IMG/VR virus record: IMGVR_UViG_3300033388_007730
Coordinates: 155,189-219,188 of that record
Strand: one strand, 5' to 3'
DNA length: 64,000 bases
In this document: in pieces, positions 9,825 through 49,853 of the stretch
Layout of the letters: each line of letters starts with the position of its first letter
Position numbering within the stretch: the stretch's first letter is position 1
The notes under the pieces: generated by a model
What the model was told of the DNA's origin: nothing
Database searches by the model: none
Seen by the model: only the letters and a program-made list of their open reading frames with translations
Position numbers and translations under genes: made by a program

Positions 9825-10217
9825 ATGAATTTTAAAGATATAATAAAAAAATATAGAGACAGGAATAAAAGCACAATATCTTCTGACAATGTGTCTCATG
9901 AGATGAATGCCATTGTGCTTTATTCAACGTCTAATGCTCTATTTGATTTTAATGGTGTTATGATTGATGATGTTATGTCTTATGGCAAATCTAAGGGATA
10001 CAACATAGATAAAATTGTTTTTCTTACCTCATATGATATAGAATTTACTGATGAGAATAAAGGTGTTAAAAAAGTAGACGATAATTCAATTAGGATTAGT
10101 CAGAATTATAGGATGAAAAGTGATGCCAAAATAAGTATTATAGAAGAAGATGGAAAAGTAATTGCCAGGGTTTTTATGGGATCTTATATTATTGTAGGTA
10201 AAATACGTGAAAAATAA
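9825..10217 (+). CDS. Hypothetical protein
   Basis: ORF overlapping next gene. Confidence 0.6.
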   Translation: MNFKDIIKKYRDRNKSTISSDNVSHEMNAIVLYSTSNALFDFNGVMIDDVMSYGKSKGYNIDKIVFLTSYDIEFTDENKGVKKVDDNSIRISQNYRMKSDAKISIIEEDGKVIARVFMGSYIIVGKIREK

Positions 10218-11673
10218 AATATCAAAAAAACGGTGGTTTTCTGAGGTAGTTCTGTATAATATGCGGGAGTCTATAATAATTACGAATGTCGATGGAGTAA
10301 TAATTTATGTGAACAAAGCAACAGAAAAATTATTTGGTTATACTGAAAAAGAAATGATAAATCAGAAACCAATAATGGTTAATGCTGAACCTGATGCAGA
10401 GAAAATCCAGGAATCTATTTTAGAGGCTATGCTATGTGATGGGGAATGGAAAGGGCAGTTGCTTAATAGGAAAAAAAATGGTGATTTATTCACAGTTGAA
10501 TTAACAATATGTCTTCTAAAAGATCTATATGATAACTTAGTTGGTTTTATAGGATATCAAAAAGATGTGACAAAAGCACTTAAGGCATCCAAGAAGATAA
10601 AAGAGAGTGAAGAGAAGTTTAGAAAAATTTTTCAAAATTCTCCTATGGGTATGCACTTGTATCAATTAAACATGGATGATGAGTTAGTTTTAATAGACTC
10701 TAATCCTGCTGCTGATGATTTTACAGGTATTAACACTGTTGATTTTATCGGAAAAACTCTCGAAGAAGCTTTTCCAGTTTTAATCGGTACAGAGATTCAT
10801 GAAAGATACAAAATGGCAGCTTCTAAAGGTATCTCTTGGAATACATCTTCTTTTACATACAAAGATGAAAGAATAAATGGTATTTATGATATATGGGCAT
10901 ATCAAATTTCACGTAATCGTGTATTAGTACAGTTTGTTGAAGTAGTTAAGAGAGAACACGTTGAAGAGGAATTAAGAAATAGAAATCAAGAGTTAGAACA
11001 ATTCGCATATGTAGCTTCTCATGACCTACAAGAACCATTGAGAGTAGTATCTAATTATTGTGAGATGTTGAGTGATAAATGCAAAACTTGTCCAAGAAGA
11101 GATAAAGATACTGAAAAGTGGTTGGAATATATAACGGAAGCTATTGATAGAATGAAAAATTTAATAAGGGAGTTATTGGATTTTTCTAGGGTAGGAAGAA
11201 AAGATAAATCATTTGAGAGTTGTAATATAGGAGACATAATAGAAGATGTTAAAGATGATTTCAAGATATTGATAAAAGAGACTGATGCTGTTATAAAAGT
11301 AGAAGAGAACATGCCATCAATAAATTGTATCGAATTCAGAATTAGACAATTATTTTATAATTTGATAAGTAATGCTATAAAATTTAGGGGAAAGAAAAAA
11401 CCGCATATAGATATAAGCTTTTATAAAGAAGATGACGAATATGTATTTTGTGTTAAAGATAATGGGATAGGAATTTCACCAAAATATTTTGATAGAATCT
11501 TTGGAATATTTAAGAGATTGTATTCTAGAGAAGAATATCCTGGTACAGGAATAGGTCTTGCTTTATGTAAGAAAATAGTAGAAACTCATAATGGCAGAAT
11601 ATGGGTTGATTCTAAAGAGAATAAAGGGGCTTCTTTTTATTTTACCCTTTCTACAGTATTAGAAAGTGATTAA
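10207..11673 (+). CDS. PAS-PAS sensor histidine kinase (Cph1-like HisKA/HATPase)
   Basis: PAS (YVNKA.E.LFGY; W.G...NR.KNG), EQFAYVASHDLQEPLR, NLISNAIKF, DNGIGI, GTGIGLALCKKIVE.HNG. Confidence 0.93.
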   Translation: MKNKISKKRWFSEVVLYNMRESIIITNVDGVIIYVNKATEKLFGYTEKEMINQKPIMVNAEPDAEKIQESILEAMLCDGEWKGQLLNRKKNGDLFTVELTICLLKDLYDNLVGFIGYQKDVTKALKASKKIKESEEKFRKIFQNSPMGMHLYQLNMDDELVLIDSNPAADDFTGINTVDFIGKTLEEAFPVLIGTEIHERYKMAASKGISWNTSSFTYKDERINGIYDIWAYQISRNRVLVQFVEVVKREHVEEELRNRNQELEQFAYVASHDLQEPLRVVSNYCEMLSDKCKTCPRRDKDTEKWLEYITEAIDRMKNLIRELLDFSRVGRKDKSFESCNIGDIIEDVKDDFKILIKETDAVIKVEENMPSINCIEFRIRQLFYNLISNAIKFRGKKKPHIDISFYKEDDEYVFCVKDNGIGISPKYFDRIFGIFKRLYSREEYPGTGIGLALCKKIVETHNGRIWVDSKENKGASFYFTLSTVLESD

Positions 11674-11691
11674 AAAATATTATTTTTTTCT

Positions 11692-11719
11692 TTGAAAGTG
11701 ATTATGAATATGGTATATT
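11692..11719 (+). promoter_or_regulatory. Sigma70-like promoter TTGAAA-N16-TATATT
   Basis: Same TTGAAAGTGA start as promoters at 29860, 46827, 55116. Confidence 0.55.
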
Positions 11720-11746
11720 AAAGATTAATTGCTTATTTTATCGATA

Positions 11747-11805
11747 AGTTTAGTAGTGTAGAGTAGAGTTTAGTAAAGCAAAGTTTAGTAAAGTTTAGAG
11801 TTTAG
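11747..11805 (+). repeat. Five AGTTTAG direct repeats in 5' leader
   Basis: Copies at 11747, 11767, 11782, 11792, 11799; last overlaps the GGAG RBS. Confidence 0.8.
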
Positions 11806-11815
11806 GAGATTCAAA

Positions 11816-12685
11816 ATGAGTTATGATCAAAAGATCAAGTCCGCGCGTCAAATCGTAGAAACCCACAATGAGAACGTAGATAATTTACATCAAGTGAATT
11901 TCGATCTGTTCATCGCGACATTGAAAGAAATGGGTGGCACTTCCGAAGAAACCCTTAAAGCTTGTAGCTGGGAAGACTTGCAGGAATGTGGAGTTCCAAA
12001 ACTTCTTGCAAGAAAATTCGCACATCTTTTCAGACAAGATAGCGACAAGGGTTTAACAAAGTCTGTTTATGTTTCTGATAAGAAAGCTAAGTCAATGACT
12101 ATCAGTGAATTATTGGAAAGATATAATCCAAGAGATATTAAAAATGCTGTTGGAAAAAGATTGGTAGATGTTTCTGATGGTAAGAGATGTATTGTTTTTG
12201 GTGACAATGGTAAAGTTAATGTAGCTGTTTCAGAAGGTCTTATCAATGATTCAATTGATGGTCACGATGAATTGACAAGTACATTCATCGATGGTATTCC
12301 AACTCCTGTTTACAAAGTTGGAGAACGTCCTGATTGTTACACTGATGAAAATCCACTTTATCCTACAAGAGCATTAAGGTCTGGTGAGAACTGTGATCAG
12401 ACTGGTCGCTCTTGGGATGGTATAGCTGTTGTTGTTCGTCAACTTCTTTATATAGCCAGGTCGCGAACAAATGAGTTGAAGATTAATTCTCTCGACGATG
12501 CTCATTCTGCTTTTGATAAAGCAGTGAGTGATAATGCTGAAAAGACAATCCGTCAGAGATATCCAAAAGCTTCATTGAAGTATGATGAATTATCATCAAT
12601 TGGCAAACTTCCTGTCTTAAAGTTGAAGATTGGCAAAGAGTGTAGTCAAGCGAATGCACCTTTTGGTAAAAACAGAACTTTTTAA
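11816..12685 (+). CDS. Hypothetical protein (SAM/HhH-like N-terminal segment)
   Basis: Strong RBS; LK..SWEDLQECGVP..LAR. Confidence 0.7.
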   Translation: MSYDQKIKSARQIVETHNENVDNLHQVNFDLFIATLKEMGGTSEETLKACSWEDLQECGVPKLLARKFAHLFRQDSDKGLTKSVYVSDKKAKSMTISELLERYNPRDIKNAVGKRLVDVSDGKRCIVFGDNGKVNVAVSEGLINDSIDGHDELTSTFIDGIPTPVYKVGERPDCYTDENPLYPTRALRSGENCDQTGRSWDGIAVVVRQLLYIARSRTNELKINSLDDAHSAFDKAVSDNAEKTIRQRYPKASLKYDELSSIGKLPVLKLKIGKECSQANAPFGKNRTF

Positions 12686-12698
12686 TGATATTAACTGT

Positions 12699-12730
12699 AG
12701 AGTAGGCGGAGAAAATCCGTCTACTCTTTA
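12699..12730 (+). terminator. Intercistronic stem-loop
   Basis: agagtaggcgga/tccgtctactct followed by tt. Confidence 0.55.
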
Positions 12731-12747
12731 TCTTTGGAGAAAACAAA

Positions 12748-13950
12748 ATGAGCACAATAATGTCAGTAAATAATTTAGAAATGGATTTGCGTATTGCCCC
12801 CAAGTTGAGTAAAGTTACAGATGCAGCTGGAGAAGAGGTTGCTCAAGGATTACCATTTGGAGTACAAACAAAGGTAAATGCTGTTGATGAGTATCCTGGT
12901 TGTCCTGATAATTGGATGAATGGCTCAAATATAGTTAGTAGCTATTTCCTTGGAGTGGAAGAAGAAAAAGGTATGTGGTTAAATTTTAATACTTGTACTT
13001 CTCACACTCACGATGTAGCAGTAATTGTCAGTGTTCAGGGTATCAATCCTGTAACTGGTCAAAAGATGGTTGGGGAAAATTCTTTGAGGCTAGAGAAGTA
13101 TCAGAGTAAATGTCCTATTCATGATATTGATTTTAAGCAGGACAGGTTCTGTGAAGAGTGTGGATACAAATGGCCTGCCCAGAATTATATAGCTACTACT
13201 GGGACTCCGTGGGGATTATTCTGGTTAGATGGATTTAGAAACTCAGATGGAGTTGTGAGACAATATATCTTTACAGAAGAAGAGATAAAAGGAGTTGCTT
13301 CTCAGATGATAGGAGATGATAGGGTATTCGCTATTGGAATTGCTTTTTATCTTAGTAAGGAACCTAAGCCTGTACCAGAGAGAAGAAGCATGATGAGAAG
13401 CATAATGAGAAGCAGTGATCCTTGTGGGCAGAGTATCAGCAACTATGCAGGTTCTCCACCAGCATATATGGGGTATATAGATGAATCTAATTTAACCCAA
13501 AAATGTTCAAAAATTGGTAGTCAAGTACCTGCAGTAAATTTTAGTTGTTCTGTCGGTGCTAGTGCTAATGATGATTTAGAACCCGTCGCTGGTAATCTTT
13601 GTTCTCTTCAAGGAGTTATTACTCCAGATGCTGCTGTTGAAGAACAAACAGCTGGAGATATCATAACTTCTAATCTTTATACTACTAATATAGATGTTGT
13701 TGAAGAAGTAGTAGCAGATGAATCAGTTGAACCTGTGATCCCTGTTAAGAAGTTAGAGGTTGGTGCTGGAGCAATGATTAATCAAAAGATTTATGTTGAT
13801 ACCAAAGAGATGGATCATTGGGAAGATAAACCTGCTGGAATGATTTATATGAATTACTGTGATAAAGAAATTTTGAAAAACATTTTGGCAAAAGGTAGAA
13901 GGAAAGAGAAAAAAGAAGGGTTCATGGAAGAGATTAAAGTTGGTAGTTAA
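12748..13950 (+). CDS. Uncharacterised conserved-looking protein with inserted zinc ribbon
   Basis: MWLNF, GINPVTG, CPIH..CEEC, QNY..WLDG..GVVRQ, GAGA.I.Q.IY.D. Confidence 0.65.
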   Translation: MSTIMSVNNLEMDLRIAPKLSKVTDAAGEEVAQGLPFGVQTKVNAVDEYPGCPDNWMNGSNIVSSYFLGVEEEKGMWLNFNTCTSHTHDVAVIVSVQGINPVTGQKMVGENSLRLEKYQSKCPIHDIDFKQDRFCEECGYKWPAQNYIATTGTPWGLFWLDGFRNSDGVVRQYIFTEEEIKGVASQMIGDDRVFAIGIAFYLSKEPKPVPERRSMMRSIMRSSDPCGQSISNYAGSPPAYMGYIDESNLTQKCSKIGSQVPAVNFSCSVGASANDDLEPVAGNLCSLQGVITPDAAVEEQTAGDIITSNLYTTNIDVVEEVVADESVEPVIPVKKLEVGAGAMINQKIYVDTKEMDHWEDKPAGMIYMNYCDKEILKNILAKGRRKEKKEGFMEEIKVGS

Positions 13951-13955
13951 TTATA

Positions 13956-13997
13956 ATATCCCCCAACATTCATTGTGATATTGGGGGATATTTTTTT
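13956..13997. terminator. Bidirectional terminator between convergent genes
   Basis: atatcccccaa/ttgggggatat stem plus T run. Confidence 0.75.
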
Positions 13998-14409
13998 ATA
14001 TAGCTTTAAGTGTTTTTACTCTTTTTCTGCCATAAGTGGCACATCTTATGGCTCTTGTTAAGTCTTCATGTTTAACTTCATCTTTGATAAGGAAATCTTT
14101 TATTCCTAATGAGAATGCTTTTATTCCTAGACTATAATCTTCTAATCCGGTAAGAATTATTATAGGTATTTTTTTATTTTTTTGTTCTAAGAATTTATTA
14201 ACTTCATTAATAGTATCTAATCCGTCTGTTTCAGGAAGGACTAAATCTAATATAATAACATCATATTCATTTTTTCCCAATTTTTCTAATGCTGCTTTTA
14301 AACAATCGCTTTCATCAGCAGTCATATCTGGAATTAGATTGGTTTGATTAATCCTTGTTATTGCTATATCTCTGTCTTCTTTACTATCATCTATAACTAG
14401 TACTTTCAT
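13996..14409 (-). CDS. Single-domain response regulator receiver
   Basis: VLVIDD, IILDL.LP..DG, IIILTG, DFLIK. Confidence 0.9.
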   Translation of the reverse strand: MKVLVIDDSKEDRDIAITRINQTNLIPDMTADESDCLKAALEKLGKNEYDVIILDLVLPETDGLDTINEVNKFLEQKNKKIPIIILTGLEDYSLGIKAFSLGIKDFLIKDEVKHEDLTRAIRCATYGRKRVKTLKAI

Positions 14410-14419
14410 TTTACTCTCA

Positions 14420-14893
14420 CTATTTTATGTTGTCATTTTTTATGATATATAAATTTCCAGCGTTTGGGAGAACGGATGTTTTAAGCCAATACTCACCCAT
14501 AGTTGCTATTTTTTCAAATAAGTTTTTAGTGCTAAAACTTTTTACTATGTATGAATTAGCATAAGCATCATATGATTTTTGGATATCTTCTTCTTCGCTA
14601 GAGTTACTGAACATTATAACTGGAATTACTTTATATTTTTTATCATTTTTTATTTTTTTTAATAGTTCATAACCGCCTATTTTTGGGAGATTTATATCTA
14701 GTATTATAAGATCAGGGGTTTTTGCTTCTTTAAATTTATTTTTCTTAAATATGTATTCTAGGGCAGTTTGTCCATTTGAAATGTTAGTTATCTCTAATTT
14801 TATATCAGGGATTCTGTGGAGAGCAGTATCTAATAAGGTGAAATCTGGCTCGTTATCTTCTATAGAAAGTATATTAAATGTAGTGTCTGTCAT
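14420..14893 (-). CDS. Rcp1-like response regulator receiver
   Basis: IEDN, PDLIILDINLPKIGG, IPVIMFSNS...DI..SY...ANSYIVK. Confidence 0.9.
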   Translation of the reverse strand: MTDTTFNILSIEDNEPDFTLLDTALHRIPDIKLEITNISNGQTALEYIFKKNKFKEAKTPDLIILDINLPKIGGYELLKKIKNDKKYKVIPVIMFSNSSEEEDIQKSYDAYANSYIVKSFSTKNLFEKIATMGEYWLKTSVLPNAGNLYIIKNDNIK

Positions 14894-17056: not shown

Positions 17057-17383
17057 ATGAGTGATACGTATGGAATAAATGAAGGAATATCTCGTTTTGA
17101 GATAATGGATCTCTGGACTGATGAAGAAAGAGAAAAATTAGAGTCAGATAGAGAAGAAAAAAGAGAAAAGTTACAATCAGACAGAGAAGAAGCAGGTTGT
17201 TGCGAGTATTGTGGATCTAAAAATAACCCACATTGGGTTCCATCTATGACGAGATATCATTGGGATAAGTACAAAAAATTGGAAGATCCTAACAGAGACT
17301 TATTTTATTGTGATGAGTGTGAAGAGTATCATATGGAGTATTGGAATAACATGTGGGAAGAGTATAGTGCTTCGAGGTGGTGA
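17057..17383 (+). CDS. Zinc-ribbon hypothetical protein with RFEIMDL motif near N-terminus
   Basis: CEYC..CDEC. Confidence 0.7.
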   Translation: MSDTYGINEGISRFEIMDLWTDEEREKLESDREEKREKLQSDREEAGCCEYCGSKNNPHWVPSMTRYHWDKYKKLEDPNRDLFYCDECEEYHMEYWNNMWEEYSASRW

Positions 17384-17384
17384 A

Positions 17385-17680
17385 ATGGATAAAATAATAG
17401 TTGTACATGATAAAAATTCAGAATATGATGCATCACCGTTTCATGATGTTCCATATGAGAAATTAAATTTTTCTGTTAAAATTAATGCTCATTTGATAGT
17501 ATATGTTTCTGAACAGAATCAAGAAGTGACTATAATTAAAAATAGATGGGGATCGAATGATGATCCTAAGATAATTAGTTTTTTGAAAATTTTTACGAGA
17601 TAGAAAATTCTCCTCCGATTGAAGAAGAGATAGAACCAGAAATTCCAGTTAATAGATTTGAGATGATGGATTTTGAATGA
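17385..17680 (+). CDS. Hypothetical protein; zero frame stops at 17603, -1 frame from T6 at 17579-17584 extends to ...NRFEMMDFE
   Basis: GAGGTG RBS; extension stop overlaps next ATG (ATGA). Confidence 0.55.
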
Positions 17681-18039
17681 GTAAACATAATGAACAATTT
17701 AGATTTGATATAATAGATTTTGGAGATGATATAGAAAATGCTTATCAGGCAAAATTAGAGAGAGAAGAGAAAAAGAGAGTAGAGAAAGTTGTTAGATTAG
17801 CAACGGATTGTAAACGCAAGGTAGAAGAAAAAGGAGTTTGTGAGGGTTGTGGCGGGAAAGAGAAATTGAGATGGGTTTGTAACGAAGAAGCCTACTTATG
17901 TTATGATTGTTATTATAAAGGTATGCGACAGTGGGAAGATCTTTGTTGCTCTCATGGTCGTAGCGCCGAAGATATTCCTGGTTTTATATATGATGATGAA
18001 TGGGAGTATCTTTGGGAAAAAGAGCAAAAAAAAACTTAA
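17677..18039 (+). CDS. Zinc-ribbon hypothetical protein with RFDIIDF motif near N-terminus
   Basis: CEGC..CYDC; same layout as 17057 ORF. Confidence 0.7.
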   Translation: MSKHNEQFRFDIIDFGDDIENAYQAKLEREEKKRVEKVVRLATDCKRKVEEKGVCEGCGGKEKLRWVCNEEAYLCYDCYYKGMRQWEDLCCSHGRSAEDIPGFIYDDEWEYLWEKEQKKT

Positions 18040-20253: not shown

Positions 20254-20568
20254 ATGAAGTATGTATTAGCTGGAAAATCAGAAACTTTTAATTTGTATTG
20301 TCATATAAATAAACAGCAACCTGATAAAGATGTAATATATGCGAAAACAGAGAAAATATTTAATGACACAACTGACATTGATACGATAGTATTATTGTCT
20401 GGATGGTGGGGAAAAAGTTGGGCTAAAAAGGCTCTTAAAGGTATTCTTGAAGTATATCCTTGTATAGATATAGAGTATTTGGATGGGCAATTTGGAGAGA
20501 AAGAGAGAGAGGGTATTTCTGCTCAGAAGAGTACACTTACCCGATTTGATTTAATAGATTTGGAGTAA
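20254..20568 (+). CDS. Hypothetical protein ending RFDLIDLE
   Basis: ORF with RBS; shared C-terminal motif. Confidence 0.7.
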   Translation: MKYVLAGKSETFNLYCHINKQQPDKDVIYAKTEKIFNDTTDIDTIVLLSGWWGKSWAKKALKGILEVYPCIDIEYLDGQFGEKEREGISAQKSTLTRFDLIDLE

Positions 20569-29894: not shown

Positions 29895-30512
29895 ATGAAA
29901 GATGGAATAAAAAATGAAGAAGTTCTTTCAGAAGAACAACAAAAACTCATATCTAAAAATATGGGACTTTTAGATGCTTTTTACAAGACTGAGATAGGAA
30001 AAGGGTATATCCCTGATCAAAAAAAAGATGATTTTTTCAGTAATCTTCAACAGAGATTTTGTAATGCTGCTCTTAAATATAATGAAGATGCTGGGTTTAA
30101 GTTTAGTACTTTTGCTTATGGTAGTTTTATTTTTTGTGCAGCAGAAATGAAAAAAAAGCTTTTCAGAGACAGAAAAGTTTTTACTGGTAATGATAAGAAA
30201 TTTGTTTCATATGGAAAAAAATCTGTTTGGAATTCTATAAATGGATGGGATGTTGATTCTGTTATCAATTATGAAAAGGTAGTTAATCTTGTAAATAAAG
30301 TTCCTTTATCTGAAAAAGAAAGAACAGTAATTAATTTTTATTATTTTGAGGGTCTTACTCTTTTAGAAACAGGAAAAAAATTGGGACTCTCCAGACAAAG
30401 AATAAAACAAATAACATTAGAAGCTATTTATAAAATTAAGAGATTTGCTGATAGAAGAGATTATAGAATAGGAGATTTTGTTAAGTATGGTGAAGGGTTT
30501 GTAAATGGCTAG
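29895..30512 (+). CDS. Sigma-70-family RNA polymerase sigma factor (regions 2 and 4)
   Basis: AA.KYN...GFKFSTFA; LSEKER.VI...Y...LTL.E.G..LGLSRQRIKQI. Confidence 0.85.
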   Translation: MKDGIKNEEVLSEEQQKLISKNMGLLDAFYKTEIGKGYIPDQKKDDFFSNLQQRFCNAALKYNEDAGFKFSTFAYGSFIFCAAEMKKKLFRDRKVFTGNDKKFVSYGKKSVWNSINGWDVDSVINYEKVVNLVNKVPLSEKERTVINFYYFEGLTLLETGKKLGLSRQRIKQITLEAIYKIKRFADRRDYRIGDFVKYGEGFVNG

Positions 30513-31110
30513 ACCTTATGGAGGACACTATTTAACAGAAGAGCAGAAGAAATTAGCAGGAGATAATCTCCCTCTTGTCTGGTGGTTCATAAGTAAGTAT
30601 GCATTGACAAAAGGAGTTATTCAAGTTCATGAAATAGATGAATGTTCTGGTTATTTGATTTGGCATCTGTGTATGTCTGCTGAAGCTTATGATCCTGATA
30701 GAGGCGTTAAATTTAGTAGCTATGCTGTGAAAGGAATGTGGAGCGGATTACATATTTATTTAAATCTTAGAAATAAGCGTATTAATAGATTTATATCAAC
30801 TGACTGGACTATGCAGGGCAATGACGGAGCCATGTCTAATGAACCAGAATATAAGTCTAAAGCAGAGAGGACCATTAAGTGGAAAGATATTAAATCTTTA
30901 TTTGATATCATAACCATGAGTCCATTAGAAGAGCAAATTGTTTTCTTCACTTATGAGAAAAAATATTCTGCTAAACGGGTAGGAGACATTGTAGGTTTAA
31001 CAGGAGAACGTATCAGACAGCTTAAAGTAATAATAATTGATAAAATAAAAATTGCTGTTAAGGAAAATAATGTTTCGATAGAAGATTTTATTATGGATGA
31101 TAAGGAATAG
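30505..31110 (+). CDS. Second sigma-70-family sigma factor
   Basis: NLPLV, YDPDRGVKFSSYA, VG.IVGLTGERIRQL. Confidence 0.85.
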   Translation: MARPYGGHYLTEEQKKLAGDNLPLVWWFISKYALTKGVIQVHEIDECSGYLIWHLCMSAEAYDPDRGVKFSSYAVKGMWSGLHIYLNLRNKRINRFISTDWTMQGNDGAMSNEPEYKSKAERTIKWKDIKSLFDIITMSPLEEQIVFFTYEKKYSAKRVGDIVGLTGERIRQLKVIIIDKIKIAVKENNVSIEDFIMDDKE

Positions 31111-35674: not shown

Positions 35675-35997
35675 ATGCCTATACCACAATATTTAAGAGG
35701 TCTGGTTGATACTGATTTGTTAGTAGTAACTAATAATTTGTTTCGTTATATAAATGCAGAATTACGCGATCATGCAGCTGATTTTGTTGTGTATGGAGAA
35801 ATATCGGTAGATATCCGAGAGATGGATAATCATGAAGGATATTTTGATTTAGATTTTTTGAGAGGAAAATTTGGGATATTGAATCTAATGAAGAAGATTA
35901 TGGTTTAGTATTTACGGAAAAAGGGAAAAATAAGGTAATAGCAAGTGATGATGATGACAGTATAACAAGAAGTGAATTAATAGATTTAGAGGAATAA
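35675..35997 (+). CDS. Hypothetical protein; zero frame stops at 35908, -1 frame from T6 at 35854-35859 extends to ...TRSELIDLEE
   Basis: Extension stop directly abuts ATG 35998. Confidence 0.55.
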
Positions 35998-37548: not shown

Positions 37549-37882
37549 TGATATGATTAGACGAGAAGAACGTGAAAGACTGTATTGGGCTAGACTAAAT
37601 GAACGTGATCTGAATTACAGGAATGAATACGAATGTCATCCTATTCCTTCACCTTCTACTAACGATATGGCTGCTGAACATATTCGTTATCTTGAGACAA
37701 AAATTGAAGAGTTGCAGAGACATATTTCAGAATTAGCAAATGTGAATTCTCAAACTATTTGGAAGAGAGATGCATGTAAAACAGCGGCGAAAGAACTGAA
37801 GGAGGAGAATGAAAAATTAAAAGAACAAATAAAGAAGTTAAATGAATATGATAAATTTGATATTATGGATTTAGAATTATGA
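37532..37882 (+). CDS. Coiled-coil hypothetical protein ending KFDIMDLEL
   Basis: GAGG RBS; shared motif. Confidence 0.7.
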   Translation: MTTRYDDMIRREERERLYWARLNERDLNYRNEYECHPIPSPSTNDMAAEHIRYLETKIEELQRHISELANVNSQTIWKRDACKTAAKELKEENEKLKEQIKKLNEYDKFDIMDLEL

Positions 37883-38451
37883 TTAGATTTGGAAGTGAAA
37901 TAAAAATAATGAATGCAGCATCAAAAAGAAAGTGGGTTGTACAACCAGTTGGTCCAGTTTCTTTATTTTATCAATATTTTAGAGATGTAGATCTTGAGTA
38001 TGAACCACCAGGAGCTTTACATATTCCTAAATTTGGAGATGTTAATTTTAAGATTTTAACAAAGTATTATTATAGAATTGATAAAGATGAGAATGATCCT
38101 AACTCTTTTTCTAGAAGAGTAGCTGCTTTTGTTGTTGATACTACAGAATATGGTCAAAAAGATCTTGAAATATTTTTATTTCCAATTAGTGTATATGGTC
38201 AGATAGTAGATGCTCCTGGTGCTGCTGGAGAATTTTCCTGGGAGATTACAAAAACAGGTAAGGCGATGCAAACTAGATACCATTCCCATCAGATGCCAAG
38301 AATACCGATTTCAGAAAAAGAGCAAAAAGTTATTGACAGTACTATGGAAGAGGTATCCGTATTAGATGTTATGACTCGTAGAATGAAAGTTTATACTACT
38401 AAGAGTTACACCACTTTTGATAGATTTGATATTTTGGATTTAGACGATTGA
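37879..38451 (+). CDS. Hypothetical protein (possible phage OB-fold SSB-like) ending RFDILDLDD
   Basis: EITKTG...TRY resembles phage SSB segment; shared motif. Confidence 0.55.
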   Translation: MIRFGSEIKIMNAASKRKWVVQPVGPVSLFYQYFRDVDLEYEPPGALHIPKFGDVNFKILTKYYYRIDKDENDPNSFSRRVAAFVVDTTEYGQKDLEIFLFPISVYGQIVDAPGAAGEFSWEITKTGKAMQTRYHSHQMPRIPISEKEQKVIDSTMEEVSVLDVMTRRMKVYTTKSYTTFDRFDILDLDD

Positions 38452-38525
38452 GTTCTGATGATTTCAATAGAGTGAACTACCTCGAAAAATAAGTTTAATA
38501 GATTTGAAGTTATGGAGATAGAGTA

Positions 38526-38969
38526 GTGGCGATTACAAGAGAAGAGGCTAGAGATGAATATCTGAAAAGAGTCTATAAGATTTTTTTGGAATGTGAAAAA
38601 TTTATAGATACAGCTCTAGTTAATAATTTCAATAAGTTAAAAGAAAGTGGTACATTAAATATAAGTGAAAAAAGAATAATGGGCTATAGCACAGATTTTG
38701 AATTTCAAGATAGATATAGAAAACAATTAGTCTCCCTTATATTAGAAAAATATTCTGATTGGAAGGTAGTTTATGATAATGGAATGGCTACATTTTCTTT
38801 TCATTATAAAGAAGAAAAAGAAGAAAATTTAATTTCTCTACTTACTAATTTAGAAGAGAGATTTAAGGGAATGGATATTGATGAAGATGATGATGAAGAG
38901 GATGATGAAGAAATATTAGATGATAGTTTTTTTGATGAAGGATATTCTAATGAAGATGTTCCTTTTTAA
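38526..38969 (+). CDS. Hypothetical protein with acidic tail ending EDVPF
   Basis: GGAG RBS, GTG start; RFKGMDID precedes tail. Confidence 0.7.
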   Translation: MAITREEARDEYLKRVYKIFLECEKFIDTALVNNFNKLKESGTLNISEKRIMGYSTDFEFQDRYRKQLVSLILEKYSDWKVVYDNGMATFSFHYKEEKEENLISLLTNLEERFKGMDIDEDDDEEDDEEILDDSFFDEGYSNEDVPF

Positions 38970-39005: not shown

Positions 39006-39479
39006 ATGGATGTAATAATATGTAAAAATTGTGGTAGGAATAGTTATTATAGTTATTATGGATTTTGTAATATCTTCTGCTGTGCTGATTTTGCCCATAA
39101 ACATAATCTCTCTGTTAAGGAAGCGACAGACGACATAAGAGGCGAGAGAATCGAAGAGTTGGAATTAGATCTAAAATGTATGGAAAGTGATAGAAATTAT
39201 TATGAGGATATGGCGTATGAGTGTCGTCGTTATGAAGCAATGTATGATGAGGTAAAAGGAGATATGAAGCTCCTAAAAAAGTTTGAACATGCTGAAAAAA
39301 CCTTAAAAGTACATAAAGATATGGAATCTATTAAAAGTAGATTATGTTTAAGAGAAAAAAAGATTAATGAATTAAGAGACAAAATAGATAAATTAGAAGA
39401 AATCTGTCAGAAGCTAAGAGCAGAGAATAAGATTCTTAATAGCAAATATACTCGTTATGAGATAATAGAGTTATTTTAA
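39006..39479 (+). CDS. Zinc-finger plus coiled-coil protein ending RYEIIELF
   Basis: CKNC..FC..CC. Confidence 0.7.
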   Translation: MDVIICKNCGRNSYYSYYGFCNIFCCADFAHKHNLSVKEATDDIRGERIEELELDLKCMESDRNYYEDMAYECRRYEAMYDEVKGDMKLLKKFEHAEKTLKVHKDMESIKSRLCLREKKINELRDKIDKLEEICQKLRAENKILNSKYTRYEIIELF

Positions 39480-39885: not shown

Positions 39886-40284
39886 ATGGTAATAAATAAT
39901 TTAAAAGGATTACGTAAATATGGAATACTAAAAGAGGGAGACATAGTTGTATTTTATATTGATGGCAAAAAGATAAAATATTCAGTGAATGTTGCTGAAA
40001 ATACCGAGTACGGGTGGGTTTATTTGAACTGTACTGGTGATTTTAATCGTCTTATCTTCAAAATTTTAGGATTAGATGCTGAAAAAATATGTAAGGAAGA
40101 ATATGGGTATGCTCTAGAAAGAGAAGCTGATTGGCCTGCTGATTGGCCTGCTGATTGGCCTTGGGCTAAACGTAATGATTTTGAAGTAGTAACAAGAGTA
40201 GTTGAAAGATTATATAAAGAGATGGGACAAATATGTGAGGATGAAGTAGAGACAGATAGGTTCTCTCTTATAGATTTTGATTAA
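39886..40284 (+). CDS. Hypothetical protein with (ADWP)x3, ending RFSLIDFD
   Basis: ORF; shared motif. Confidence 0.7.
   Translation: MVINNLKGLRKYGILKEGDIVVFYIDGKKIKYSVNVAENTEYGWVYLNCTGDFNRLIFKILGLDAEKICKEEYGYALEREADWPADWPADWPWAKRNDFEVVTRVVERLYKEMGQICEDEVETDRFSLIDFD
40126..40161 (+). repeat. Perfect 12-nt tandem repeat gctgattggcct x3
   Basis: Direct reading. Confidence 0.9.
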
Positions 40285-40296
40285 AAGGATGGAAAA

Positions 40297-41097
40297 ATGA
40301 GTAGTAGTTTAATTATACAAGTTAGTGAAATTAAAGACGTAAGAAATCATCCAAATGCTGATAGACTTGATATTATCTCTATTAAAGGTAAAGGATGGGA
40401 GACAATTGTTAAGAGAGATGAGTATAAGGTAGGAGATGTAGTTATTTATATTCCCACAGATGTTATTCTTCCTCTTGAATTGGTAGAGAAGCTTGGGATT
40501 GCGAATTACTTAGCTGGAAAGCAGAAGAATAGAGTTAAGTGCGCAAGACTCCGTGGTGAGATGTCTTATGGTTTGGTTATTCCTAATGAAAAGAATTGGG
40601 AAGTAGGACGAGATGTTGCGGCAGAATTGGGTATTGTAAAATACGAGCCTCCTGTCAGAGCTATGGCTGGTGACGCTGCTCCAGAGGATTCAACTTTTCA
40701 TCGTTATACTGATATTGAGAATATCAATAACTTTCCTGATATTTTCAAAGATGGTGAGATGGTTGTTGCTACAGAAAAAATTGATGGATGTTTTAGATAT
40801 GATCAAAAGGTTTCTCTTGTCAACGGAGAGCAAATTTCTATCTCAGAAGTTGAGATTGGAGATATGGTTCTTTCTTATGATGAAAAAGAGGGCGAATTTG
40901 TGGCATCTAAAGTTGAGGATGTTATTATTCAAAATGTCTCTAAACAATGGGTAGAATTATCGTTTGATAATGGAAAAGAAATTGTTTGTACTGCTGATCA
41001 TTTATTCTTAACTAAGAACAGAAGATGGGTAGAGGCTGGTGATCTGGAAGAAGAAGATGAATTAGTTACGATGGATGAAGAATTTGAAAATAAATAA
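40297..41097 (+). CDS. DRB0094-family RNA ligase N-fragment fused to IntN (40789-41094)
   Basis: HPNADRLD, LRG..SYGL, KYEPP, TEKIDG then CFRYD..CTADH. Confidence 0.88.
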   Translation: MSSSLIIQVSEIKDVRNHPNADRLDIISIKGKGWETIVKRDEYKVGDVVIYIPTDVILPLELVEKLGIANYLAGKQKNRVKCARLRGEMSYGLVIPNEKNWEVGRDVAAELGIVKYEPPVRAMAGDAAPEDSTFHRYTDIENINNFPDIFKDGEMVVATEKIDGCFRYDQKVSLVNGEQISISEVEIGDMVLSYDEKEGEFVASKVEDVIIQNVSKQWVELSFDNGKEIVCTADHLFLTKNRRWVEAGDLEEEDELVTMDEEFENK

Positions 41098-42029: not shown

Positions 42030-42434
42030 ATGTTGGTATATTGGGTTGTTGGATGTGTGTTAGAGTATCTACTTATTGGGTTAGTTACAGGCGGTATCCT
42101 ATTAAAAAGCGAAAGGAAATGTCTAGACAAAATTGAGATAGGAGAAGACATTTTTATTCCGATGTTTCTTTGGCCTATTTTTGTTATATTTTGTATTTGT
42201 GATGGGGCTAGTTGGGTAGTAAAAAACATTTTTAGGTTCATAGCTCTTTATATATTTAAAATTCCAGCAACAACTCTACTCGCTAGTCAACCTGATGATG
42301 GAGGTTTTGTACAGGGCACATCAGGTGGAGGTAGTAATCCACCGCCTTCTACTCCTAAACCAAATATAACTCCACCATCGCAAAAAAAGGATGAAGTGCC
42401 AACTTCAAGAGCTAGTCTCATAGATATAGATTAA
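42030..42434 (+). CDS. Membrane protein with Pro-rich linker ending RASLIDID
   Basis: Hydrophobic segments; shared motif variant. Confidence 0.7.
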   Translation: MLVYWVVGCVLEYLLIGLVTGGILLKSERKCLDKIEIGEDIFIPMFLWPIFVIFCICDGASWVVKNIFRFIALYIFKIPATTLLASQPDDGGFVQGTSGGGSNPPPSTPKPNITPPSQKKDEVPTSRASLIDID

Positions 42435-45975: not shown

Positions 45976-46140
45976 ATTTCGGATTGTGGAGGGATTTGGA
46001 TAAGAAGGACTCGTAACGTTACAGTAGATAAAGATGATGCTAAACTTATCCATGAGTTTAGTAGGAATAGAGTTAAGAGGTTGAGAATGATGAGCAAATC
46101 AAATCCAGTATCTAGAGAAGAGTTAATAGATTTAGATTAG
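45958..46140 (+). pseudogene. Probable 3' remnant of a gene ending SREELIDLD
   Basis: Begins inside the TnpB fragment; shared motif variant. Confidence 0.5.
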
Positions 46141-48853: not shown

Positions 48854-49853
48854 ACAAAAAGTTGTAGCTATTAGTGATTTTTTTAATCTTGTAGAGGACG
48901 AAGGTGGGATTTATGAAGTAGAAACTCCTCAAGGATGGGTAGAAATAGGAGATTTAGTCAAAAAGTCTAATAAAGAATGTTATGCTTTATTAACTGATAA
49001 TTATAATGAAATTAGAGGATCTAATGATCATTATGTGGAGACTAAAAGAGGGTGGGTAAAATTAGAAGATATAGATGTTAAGAATGATATTGTTTATACC
49101 GATGAAGGAGAAGAATTAGTAGTCTCTTTAGAAAGTATTGGAGTTCATGATACATTTGATTTAGAAGTTTTAAATGATGAGCATAAATACTATGCCAATG
49201 GAATTGTTAGCCATAATACAGGAAAAACAACAATTGGTAATATCATTTGTAATATGATACCAGATCATACCGTTATATGGATAACTCCTGAAATTTTAGC
49301 GGAGAATATGCATCGTGCTTTTAATTCTATTAAGTCATTATATAAATTGGCAGATTTTGTTTCTCCTTGTGTTATTATACTTGAGGATTTAGATTTATTT
49401 GGCAATGATCGAGACAAAGGTGGAGATATATTATCTCTTGGTGCTTTGATGAATGTTTTAGATGGTGTCAATTCTATTAAAAACGCTGTTACAATAGGAA
49501 CTACTAATAGATTAAGTTCCATTGAATCAGCTTTGAAGAATAGACCAGGAAGGTTTGACAGAGTTATAGAAATACCAGCACTTCCGAAAGAATTGAGAAA
49601 GAAGATGTTCAGAGATAGATTAAAAGGATGGACTGTTGAAAAGGGTGCATTGGATTATATCGTTGAGAACACTAATAAATGGACTGGAGCAGAAGCACAA
49701 GAATTTATCAATAGTTTGAATTTGAAACATATTGGCAGTAATAAGAAAAAGAAGAAAGTTACTATAGTGTGGGCAGAAGAGATTATCAAAACTATGAATA
49801 AATTTGGAGTGGGAGAAGCAAGTAGTTCATTCGGATTCGGTGCTGATAAATGA
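48837..49853 (+). CDS. IntC (127 aa, 48837-49217) fused to AAA+ ATPase C-fragment
   Basis: V.TPQGW, SNDH, FDLEV..H.YYANGIVSHN then TGKT; ILEDLD, TTNR, NRPGRFDR. Confidence 0.9.
   Translation: MMEISEQKVVAISDFFNLVEDEGGIYEVETPQGWVEIGDLVKKSNKECYALLTDNYNEIRGSNDHYVETKRGWVKLEDIDVKNDIVYTDEGEELVVSLESIGVHDTFDLEVLNDEHKYYANGIVSHNTGKTTIGNIICNMIPDHTVIWITPEILAENMHRAFNSIKSLYKLADFVSPCVIILEDLDLFGNDRDKGGDILSLGALMNVLDGVNSIKNAVTIGTTNRLSSIESALKNRPGRFDRVIEIPALPKELRKKMFRDRLKGWTVEKGALDYIVENTNKWTGAEAQEFINSLNLKHIGSNKKKKKVTIVWAEEIIKTMNKFGVGEASSSFGFGADK

What the first reader, a model, noticed from the sequence alone, without database searches (positions are those of the whole stretch)
17579..17680. -1 frame at T TTT TTG appends the tag (case 1)
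The ORF from 17385 stops at 17603, but the -1 frame entered at T6 (17579-17584, an X XXY YYZ slippery pattern) reads FENFYEIENSPPIEEEIEPEIPVNRFEMMDFE and ends in an ATGA overlap with the next gene. The extension looks like real coding sequence. It is either programmed ribosomal/transcriptional slippage giving tagged and untagged isoforms, phase variation, or a homopolymer under-call.
Basis: partly seen in the sequence, partly recalled or inferred. Interest (0 to 1): 0.68.

Follow-up and report, generated by a model that had tools for sequence, protein, structure and literature searches.

The report
Frame-broken tagged gene in a megaphage
A small gene of a very large phage is cut off from its own conserved tail peptide by a one-base frame break at a run of six T; this is most likely a recent mutation, but deliberate ribosome slippage making tagged and untagged forms is not excluded.

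Summary
The ORF 17385-17603 (72 aa) contains an in-phase T_TTT_TTG at 17579-17585. The -1 frame opens exactly at 17579 and runs to TGA 17678-17680, in an ATGA overlap with the next gene. It ends in a peptide tag carried by about 24 ORFs of this 219-kb phage contig and by about 100 ORFs of two related huge phages of 351-548 kb.

The extension is real coding sequence. Three homologues encode the N-domain, linker and tag as one unbroken ORF, and codon usage fits only the -1 frame. T6 is not an under-call: it recurs in two or three assemblies, and 221 runs of seven to nine A or T lie in intact genes.

Evidence against a programmed shift:
- no homologue is shifted
- there is no stimulatory RNA structure
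- the heptamer is not avoided elsewhere
- the lineage carries other real frame-broken genes

Evidence for a programmed shift: a second gene (35675-35908) has the identical in-phase heptamer, and its -1 extension also ends in a tag.

My odds are fixed frameshift mutation about 0.5, programmed slippage about 0.27, phase variation about 0.08 and assembly error about 0.05. I could not examine reads.

The parts
17385..17603 (+). 0-frame ORF of 72 aa: the N-domain of a small phage protein family, ending 5 codons after the heptamer at TAG
   Evidence: It is 49% identical to residues 1-72 of the 104-aa homologue P0007 (E 7e-20). There is no Pfam or PHROG family.
17579..17585 (+). T_TTT_TTG heptamer in X_XXY_YYZ phase (T6 = 17579-17584)
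   Evidence: It is identical in the NCBI assembly L003.
17579..17593 (+). stretch within which the frame change must lie (T6, G, A4, start of T5)
   Evidence: The -1 frame is closed by TAG 17576-78. The family-conserved F lies in the 0 frame at 17580-82, and the conserved Y-[GE]-I lies only in the -1 frame from 17594.
17585..17680 (+). -1-frame extension: acidic linker plus tag, 31 codons and TGA
   Evidence: 56% identical to P0007 residues 68-101 (E 5e-10). Codon-usage score is +19.7 bits. There is no internal start codon.
17654..17677 (+). the tag itself (R-F-E-M-M-D-F-E, then stop)
   Evidence: The seven core residues are identical in P0007.
17677..18039 (+). next gene (120-aa Cys-rich protein with the motif near its N-terminus); its ATG overlaps the TGA of the extension
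   Evidence: A paralogue lies at 17057-17383. Homologues of both sit next to the family in G002.
35675..35908 (+). second case: 77-aa ORF with the identical in-phase heptamer at 35854-35860
   Evidence: The exact product is on 2-3 contigs.
35860..35997 (+). second case: -1-frame extension of 45 codons ending in a tag variant (R-S-E-L-I-D-L-E-E) and TAA, abutting ATG 35998
   Evidence: Codon-usage score is +16.0 bits against -67 and -70. The same R-S-E tag variant ends many G001 ORFs.

Best explanation
The gene belongs to a small family of huge-phage proteins. Each has an N-domain of about 70 aa, a disordered acidic linker and a C-terminal peptide tag (R-F-[DE]-x-[IML]-D-[LIF]).

In this phage lineage the DNA really carries one base too few in the T6-G-A4 stretch at the end of the domain, most simply T7 to T6. 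Ordinary decoding therefore stops at TAG 17603 and yields a 72-aa protein without linker or tag. The 31 codons downstream are the recently disconnected, still intact remainder of the gene.

Shown: the frame break is real, the two parts are homologous to one ORF, and T6 is reproducible. Inferred: the break is a fixed mutation and not a recoding signal. Any tagged product would then come only from background slippage at the T run.
For: - Three homologues are single ORFs carrying the tag in frame: P0007 and two tandem copies in G002, which lie beside the same Cys-rich neighbour genes. None has a T run at the junction.
- T6 is identical in a second assembly that differs by 2 SNPs and a (TA)3 indel over 12 kb. 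The exact truncated product is on 2-3 contigs.
- There is no downstream RNA structure: -10.5 kcal/mol, z +1.17.
- In-phase T_TTT_TTG occurs 21 times in genes against about 16 expected, so it is not avoided.
- About 105 tagged ORFs in the relatives G001 and G002 show no such junction.
- The lineage has other real breaks relative to both relatives. A conserved protein of about 250 aa lies in three frames, one junction without any homopolymer, and its pieces are reproduced on 2-3 contigs. A protein of about 1330 aa is split at G000 ~9087.
- A tagged gene carries an in-frame TAG. A tag remnant sits at 38500-38523 where G001 has a longer ORF.
- The low-confidence model puts the break at the end of the last helix, so the truncated domain could still fold.
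Against: - A second tagged gene is broken at the identical heptamer, in the same phase and with the same next base. If deletions hit runs of 7 or more at random, the chance that the second event matches the first is about 0.05: 11 of 223 runs are in-phase T7 followed by G.
- Both extensions are undecayed, and each ends exactly at the next gene's start.
- No reads were examined.
Confidence: 0.5

Rival explanations
1. Programmed -1 slippage. Ribosomes on T_TTT_TTG shift back one base, with tRNA-Phe and tRNA-Leu re-pairing on UUU UUU. Less likely, RNA polymerase adds a U. A fraction of the product then carries linker and tag while the rest is the untagged 72-aa form. The same device would be used at 35854-35860.
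For: - The heptamer is canonical and in phase, and the 0-frame stop follows 5 codons later.
- The -1 frame opens at the heptamer and closes on the next gene's ATG.
- Two unrelated tagged genes share the identical heptamer and phase.
- Both extensions keep full coding signature.
- T6 is stable across assemblies.
Against: - No homologue has the shift.
- There is no stimulatory structure and no shared SD-like element upstream (reading).
- The heptamer is not depleted in phase elsewhere.
- None of about 105 tags in G001 and G002 is attached this way.
- From general knowledge, UUG in the A site is a poor slippery codon, and T6 is short for transcriptional slippage.
Confidence: 0.27
2. Phase variation. 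The T run switches between 6 and 7 by replication slippage, turning the tag off and on within the phage population.
For: - A homopolymer sits at the domain-linker boundary in two tagged genes.
- The extensions are intact.
Against: - All 2-3 assemblies carry T6 at both sites.
- No fused, T7-type product appears in the 90%-cluster word search or the 1.84-billion-representative search.
- Runs of 6-7 are short for contingency loci (general knowledge).
Confidence: 0.08
3. Assembly or sequencing under-call. The true sequence is T7 and the gene is one ordinary ORF.
For: The break lies in a homopolymer within a metagenome-assembled contig, and T7 gives an alignment with the homologues as good as any other repair.
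Against: - The same T6 occurs in assemblies that differ elsewhere.
- 36 T7, 6 T8, 133 A7, 40 A8 and 6 A9 runs sit in intact genes, including 9 in-phase T7 followed by G.
- Coding density is 91%.
- Another break in this contig has no homopolymer and is also reproduced.
Confidence: 0.05
4. TAG read-through in the 0 frame. Both stops after the ORF (17601 and 17631) are TAG, and the 0 frame then ends in a tag-like K-F-Q-L-I-D-L-R before TGA 17661-17663.
For: The tag-like ending was seen. One other tagged gene has an in-frame TAG.
Against: - TAG ends 51 of 248 ORFs, and recoding does not raise coding density.
- There is no suppressor tRNA in this contig or in G001, and none identified in G002, where one call has an unreadable anticodon.
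- The codon-usage score of this frame is -32.9 bits.
- The homologues match the -1 frame, not this one.
Confidence: 0.01

Closest known systems
Classical bacterial and phage -1 programmed frameshift sites (dnaX A_AAA_AAG, IS911, phage tail chaperone G/GT)
   Same: There is an in-phase X_XXY_YYZ heptamer near the end of the upstream ORF, the 0-frame stop follows a few codons later, and a -1 extension adds a C-terminal module.
   Different: There is no stimulatory structure or SD element. The shift is not conserved in homologues. The gene is not a tail chaperone and sits among thyX, Cys-rich proteins and an RNA ligase. The A-site codon is UUG.
HIV-1 type U_UUU_UUA slippery heptamer (general knowledge)
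   Same: A run of six U read as UUU UUN by tRNA-Phe and tRNA-Leu.
   Different: The last base is G, not A. That weakens re-pairing of the A-site tRNA. The system is bacterial and has no downstream stem-loop.
Rescue of frameshifted genes by polymerase slippage at long poly(A)/poly(T) tracts in AT-rich endosymbionts (general knowledge)
   Same: An AT-rich genome, with the frame broken at a homopolymer and the downstream sequence intact.
   Different: Those tracts are about 9 or more bases long. This one is 6.
Ordinary frameshift-truncated genes or young pseudogenes
   Same: A one-base loss in a homopolymer, unbroken homologues, and other broken genes in the same genome.
   Different: Two events hit the same heptamer in the same phase, and both cut off only the tag.
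Terminal peptide docking motifs such as sliding-clamp-binding peptides (QL[SD]LF; the RB69 polymerase tail, recalled from memory)
   Same: The tag is a short acidic-hydrophobic peptide at the extreme C-terminus (in a few proteins near the N-terminus) behind a disordered linker. The phage encodes its own divergent beta-clamp.
   Different: The tagged proteins are small ORFans, not replication enzymes. The complex prediction gave no verdict. The partner of the tag is unknown.

Membership tests
Programmed -1 ribosomal frameshift site | In-phase slippery heptamer X_XXY_YYZ | tested here: met
   AGT TTT TTG at 17577-17585. The same heptamer lies at 35854-35860.
Programmed -1 ribosomal frameshift site | An overlapping -1 ORF with coding character that extends the product | tested here: met
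   Codon-usage score is +19.7 bits. Homology to P0007 gives E 5e-10.
Programmed -1 ribosomal frameshift site | Stimulatory element (downstream hairpin or pseudoknot, or upstream SD-like sequence) | tested here: not met
   MFE is -10.5 kcal/mol, weaker than shuffles (z +1.17). No SD-like sequence lies 10-14 nt upstream in case 1 (reading).
Programmed -1 ribosomal frameshift site | Shift conserved among homologues | tested here: not met
   P0007 and two G002 homologues are single ORFs.
Programmed -1 ribosomal frameshift site | Two protein products observed | not testable with these tools
   This needs proteomics or a reporter assay.
Transcriptional slippage site | Long A or T run (about 8-9 or more) | tested here: not met
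   The run is T6.
Phase-variable homopolymer (contingency locus) | Length polymorphism of the tract between strains or reads | tested here: inconclusive
   All 2-3 assemblies have T6, and no fused product is in the protein collections. Reads could not be examined.
Homopolymer assembly error | Not reproducible, with other homopolymer breaks across the contig | tested here: not met
   T6 is reproduced. 221 runs of 7 or more lie in intact genes.
Stop-codon-reassigned phage (TAG recoded) | Coding density rises under the other code, with a suppressor tRNA present | tested here: not met
   Coding density is 0.910 under code 11 against 0.907, and TAG ends 51 ORFs. No suppressor tRNA was identified; one G002 tRNA call has an unreadable anticodon.
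Phage tail assembly chaperone G/GT frameshift | Position between the tail tube and tape measure genes | tested here: not met
   The neighbours are thyX, Cys-rich proteins, an RNA ligase, thioredoxin and SSB.
Sliding-clamp-binding motif (as the identity of the tag) | The peptide binds the clamp pocket | tested here: inconclusive
   The complex prediction of the clamp with the extension gave no verdict.
Sliding-clamp-binding motif (as the identity of the tag) | Carried by replication, repair or transcription proteins | tested here: not met
   Eleven tagged proteins have no significant family above cut-off.

The most novel reading that the evidence does not exclude
Two unrelated small genes of a huge phage (about 500 kb) use the same bare T_TTT_TTG heptamer to make untagged and tagged isoforms. 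Slippage would then set how much of each protein carries a family-wide C-terminal docking or sorting peptide. That would be a recoding-controlled peptide tag, acquired in this lineage only.
Probability: 0.25. Interest if true: 0.7.

Novelty: new member of a known kind. Interest (0 to 1): 0.4.

Why it matters
If the break is a mutation, the case is ordinary. It still shows that tagged accessory genes of these huge phages turn over quickly, and that intact-looking tags can sit outside any ORF.

If it is programmed, it would be a lineage-specific recoding event that doses a peptide tag.

The tag itself matters more. It ends roughly 10% of the ORFs of three related huge phages. It is absent from the paper library as a sequence string, is carried only by proteins of unknown function, and must be read by an unknown common partner.

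Tried and rejected
- **Relatives by word search and contig scans.** These found nothing beyond the genome's own records.
- **GenBank phages.** tblastn gave no significant match for P0007 and none for case 2. megablast found none.
- **P0006.** This 1335-aa hit with 16 stretches of a low-complexity repeat is taken as spurious.
- **Paralogues in the contig.** None found.
- **TAG recoding.** Rejected.
- **Independent start of the extension.** Rejected, as it has no start codon.
- **Clamp binding of the tag.** Complex prediction gave no verdict, which is evidence neither way.
- **A phage-encoded reader of the tag.** No PDZ_2 or ClpP family in G000, G001 or G002.
- **Structure.** The family model is low confidence (pLDDT 59.6), so I ran no fold search.
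- **Literature.** Searches for the tag strings and for the heptamer gave nothing usable.
- **Tag DNA pattern in prokaryote genomes.** It gave only 22 scattered single hits at chance level.
- **Other.** Relatives cannot be drawn for a virus record, and the NCBI record is not held for a whole-contig comparison.

Full report
**Setting**

The window is bases 155189-219188 of a 219,188-bp IMG/VR virus contig (JGI 3300033388). CheckV rates it 44% complete, so the genome is probably about 500 kb. GC content is 31.6%, and no tRNA lies on this piece. Code 11 fits: coding density is 91%, and 248 ORFs end in TAA (152), TAG (51) or TGA (45). Recoding any stop does not raise the density.

Two related huge phages were found through the tag's DNA pattern:
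- G001: 547,943 bp, 100% complete, 29 tRNAs.
- G002: 350,866 bp, 73% complete, 31 tRNAs.

Of 274 ORFs in this contig, 185 hit G001 and 169 hit G002, at about 51% amino-acid identity and in conserved order.

**The observation**

The ORF runs from ATG 17385 to TAG 17601-17603 (72 aa). Its codons AGT TTT TTG put T_TTT_TTG (17579-17585) in X_XXY_YYZ phase. In the -1 frame a TAG lies at 17576-17578. That frame therefore opens exactly at the T run. It stays open for 33 codons to TGA 17678-17680, which overlaps ATG 17677 of the next gene. It has no start codon of its own.

The last eight residues are a tag: R-F-[DE]-x-[IML]-[DE]-[LIFM], followed by zero to three residues, mostly acidic in this contig, and a stop. 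About 24 ORFs of this contig end this way. So do about 70 ORFs of G001 and about 35 of G002, where the consensus is R-F-E-I-L-D-L at the very end.

**The extension is real coding sequence of the same gene**

It is a single ORF. Its residues 1-72 match the 72-aa ORF (49% identity, E 7e-20). Its residues 68-101 match the -1 extension (56% identity, E 5e-10), and the tag core is identical.

G002 carries two tandem homologues of 89 and about 102 aa. They lie directly upstream of homologues of the two Cys-rich genes that flank the gene here. Both are single ORFs ending in the tag. Their junction has no T run.

Codon-usage log-odds for the stretch after the 0-frame stop is +19.7 bits in the -1 frame, against -32.9 and -56.5 in the other two. 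Real genes give 13.0 +/- 5.9 per 25 codons in frame and -36 out of frame.

The family-conserved F lies in the 0 frame (17580-82). The conserved Y-[GE]-I lies only in the -1 frame (from 17594). The frame change must therefore fall within 17579-17593. T6 is the longest run there, but A4 cannot be excluded.

**T6 is real DNA**

An NCBI MAG contig (GCA_017610105.1, 133,853 bp) matches 12,237 bp around the site, differing only by 2 SNPs and one (TA)3 indel. It has the same T6. The exact truncated product is on two or three contigs.

Inside intact genes the contig has 36 T7, 6 T8, 133 A7, 40 A8 and 6 A9 runs. Nine of these are in-phase T7 followed by G. No fused product exists in either protein collection.

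**For and against programming**

There is no downstream structure: MFE is -10.5 kcal/mol against a shuffle mean of -13.4 (z +1.17). The two sites share no SD-like element upstream. In-phase T_TTT_TTG occurs 21 times in genes against about 16 expected from codon usage, so it is not avoided. None of the homologues is shifted, and none of about 105 tags in G001 and G002 is joined this way.

On the other side, a second gene shows the same arrangement:
- The ORF is ATG 35675 to TAG 35906-35908 (77 aa).
- It has the identical in-phase heptamer, GAT TTT TTG A, at 35854-35860.
- Its -1 frame opens at 35848 and runs to TAA 35995-35997, abutting ATG 35998.
- It ends in a tag variant (R-S-E-L-I-D-L-E-E) that is common in G001.
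- That extension scores +16.0 bits, against -67 and -70 in the other frames.
- The 77-aa product is on two or three contigs.

If one-base deletions struck runs of 7 or more at random, the chance that a second event matches the first in base, phase and next base is about 11 in 223, or 0.05. I found no homologue for this second gene.

**Real frame breaks occur in this lineage**

Comparing the ORFs of G001 and G002 with this contig shows two more broken genes:
- A conserved protein of about 1330 aa is split by a +1 change at G000 ~9087 (ATA TTT TGA AGT).
- A conserved protein of about 250 aa is spread over three frames (65, 127 and 61 aa; L066:754-1495).

In the second gene, one junction has no homopolymer at all, and the pieces are on two or three contigs. 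A tagged repeat protein (G000 49236-49814) has an in-frame TAG. A tag remnant lies at window 38500-38523, eight codons after a stop; G001 has a tagged ORF of 38-44 codons at the matching place. G001 also has one orphan tag that no simple shift can join. Intact-looking tags outside ORFs therefore arise by decay.

**Weighing**

Error is unlikely. Unbroken homologues, the lack of stimulators, the lack of heptamer avoidance and the demonstrated gene decay all favour a fixed, recent one-base deletion. The repeated heptamer favours programming by roughly ten- to twenty-fold, which does not overcome the rest.

My odds are mutation 0.5, programmed slippage 0.27, phase variation 0.08, error 0.05 and TAG read-through 0.01, with the remainder unassigned.

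**The tag**

Eleven tagged proteins have no significant Pfam family above cut-off, and the few PHROG hits are to families of unknown function. The tag follows a linker that the model leaves disordered. In the two Cys-rich paralogues it sits near the N-terminus instead. It therefore behaves as a terminal docking peptide.

The phage encodes a divergent beta-clamp at G000 151558-152823. The evidence is Pfam E 4e-4, and an Atlas structural match with TM 0.73 by the query and 0.83 by the matched row. The motif loosely resembles clamp-binding peptides, a resemblance I recall from memory. However, the complex prediction gave no verdict, and the tagged proteins are not replication enzymes. No PDZ_2 or ClpP family is present. 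The strings are in no paper of the library. The tag's partner and role remain unknown.

**Limits**

Only one homologue is close (50% identity), and its DNA is not held. All near relatives are almost identical strains. No reads, RNA or protein data were available.

Noticed in passing
window 20542-20568, 37853-37882, 38422-38451, 39453-39479, 40258-40284, 42408-42434, 46114-46140; also L005, L006, L007 and all of G001 and G002: A C-terminal peptide tag (R-F-[DE]-x-[IML]-D-[LIF], then a stop) ends about 24 ORFs of this contig, about 70 of G001 and about 35 of G002. These ORFs often lie in arrays of small genes of unknown function. The tag does not appear in the paper library.
   Followed up: partly
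window 35675-35997: A second gene has the identical in-phase T_TTT_TTG (35854-35860). Its -1 extension ends in a tag variant and abuts the next gene's ATG.
   Followed up: partly
window 38452-38526: An orphan tag (N-R-F-E-V-M-E-I-E, then a stop) lies eight codons after a TGA, in the same frame as the already tagged gene 37879-38451. Its TAG overlaps the GTG of the next gene. G001 has a tagged ORF of 38-44 codons at the matching place.
   Followed up: partly
L005:4236-4814 (G000 49236-49814): A tagged protein with repeats of an L-S-E-D-F-I-R-E-F-like motif is interrupted by one in-frame TAG (L005:4488-4490). It is the only plus-strand case in the contig where a long open stretch follows a stop without a start codon.
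   Followed up: partly
L065 about 1060-1100 (G000 about 9087): A protein of about 1330 aa, conserved in G001 and G002, is split here by a +1 frame change at ATA TTT TGA AGT (a T run before a stop codon).
   Followed up: no
L066:754-1495 (G000 107754-108495): A protein of about 250 aa, conserved in G001 and G002, lies in three successive frames (65, 127 and 61 aa). The second junction has no homopolymer and forms an ATGA overlap. The pieces are on two or three contigs.
   Followed up: partly
L008:1501-2766 (G000 151558-152823, just upstream of the window): A divergent phage-encoded beta sliding clamp of 421 aa (weak Pfam DNA_pol3_beta hit; Atlas structural match TM 0.73/0.83).
   Followed up: partly
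window 17604-17663: The 0 frame after the ORF's TAG meets a second TAG and then ends in a tag-like K-F-Q-L-I-D-L-R before TGA. This is probably chance: the codon-usage score is -33 bits.
   Followed up: yes
window 17057-17383 and 17677-18039: Two Cys-rich (CxxC) paralogues carry the tag-like motif near the N-terminus. It is conserved as R-F-E-L-L-I-F-E in their G001 and G002 homologues.
   Followed up: partly
window 10207-14893: The phage encodes a PAS histidine kinase and two response-regulator receiver proteins. Two Sigma70_r4 proteins lie at 29895-31110, and an intein-containing protein at 40297-41097.
   Followed up: no
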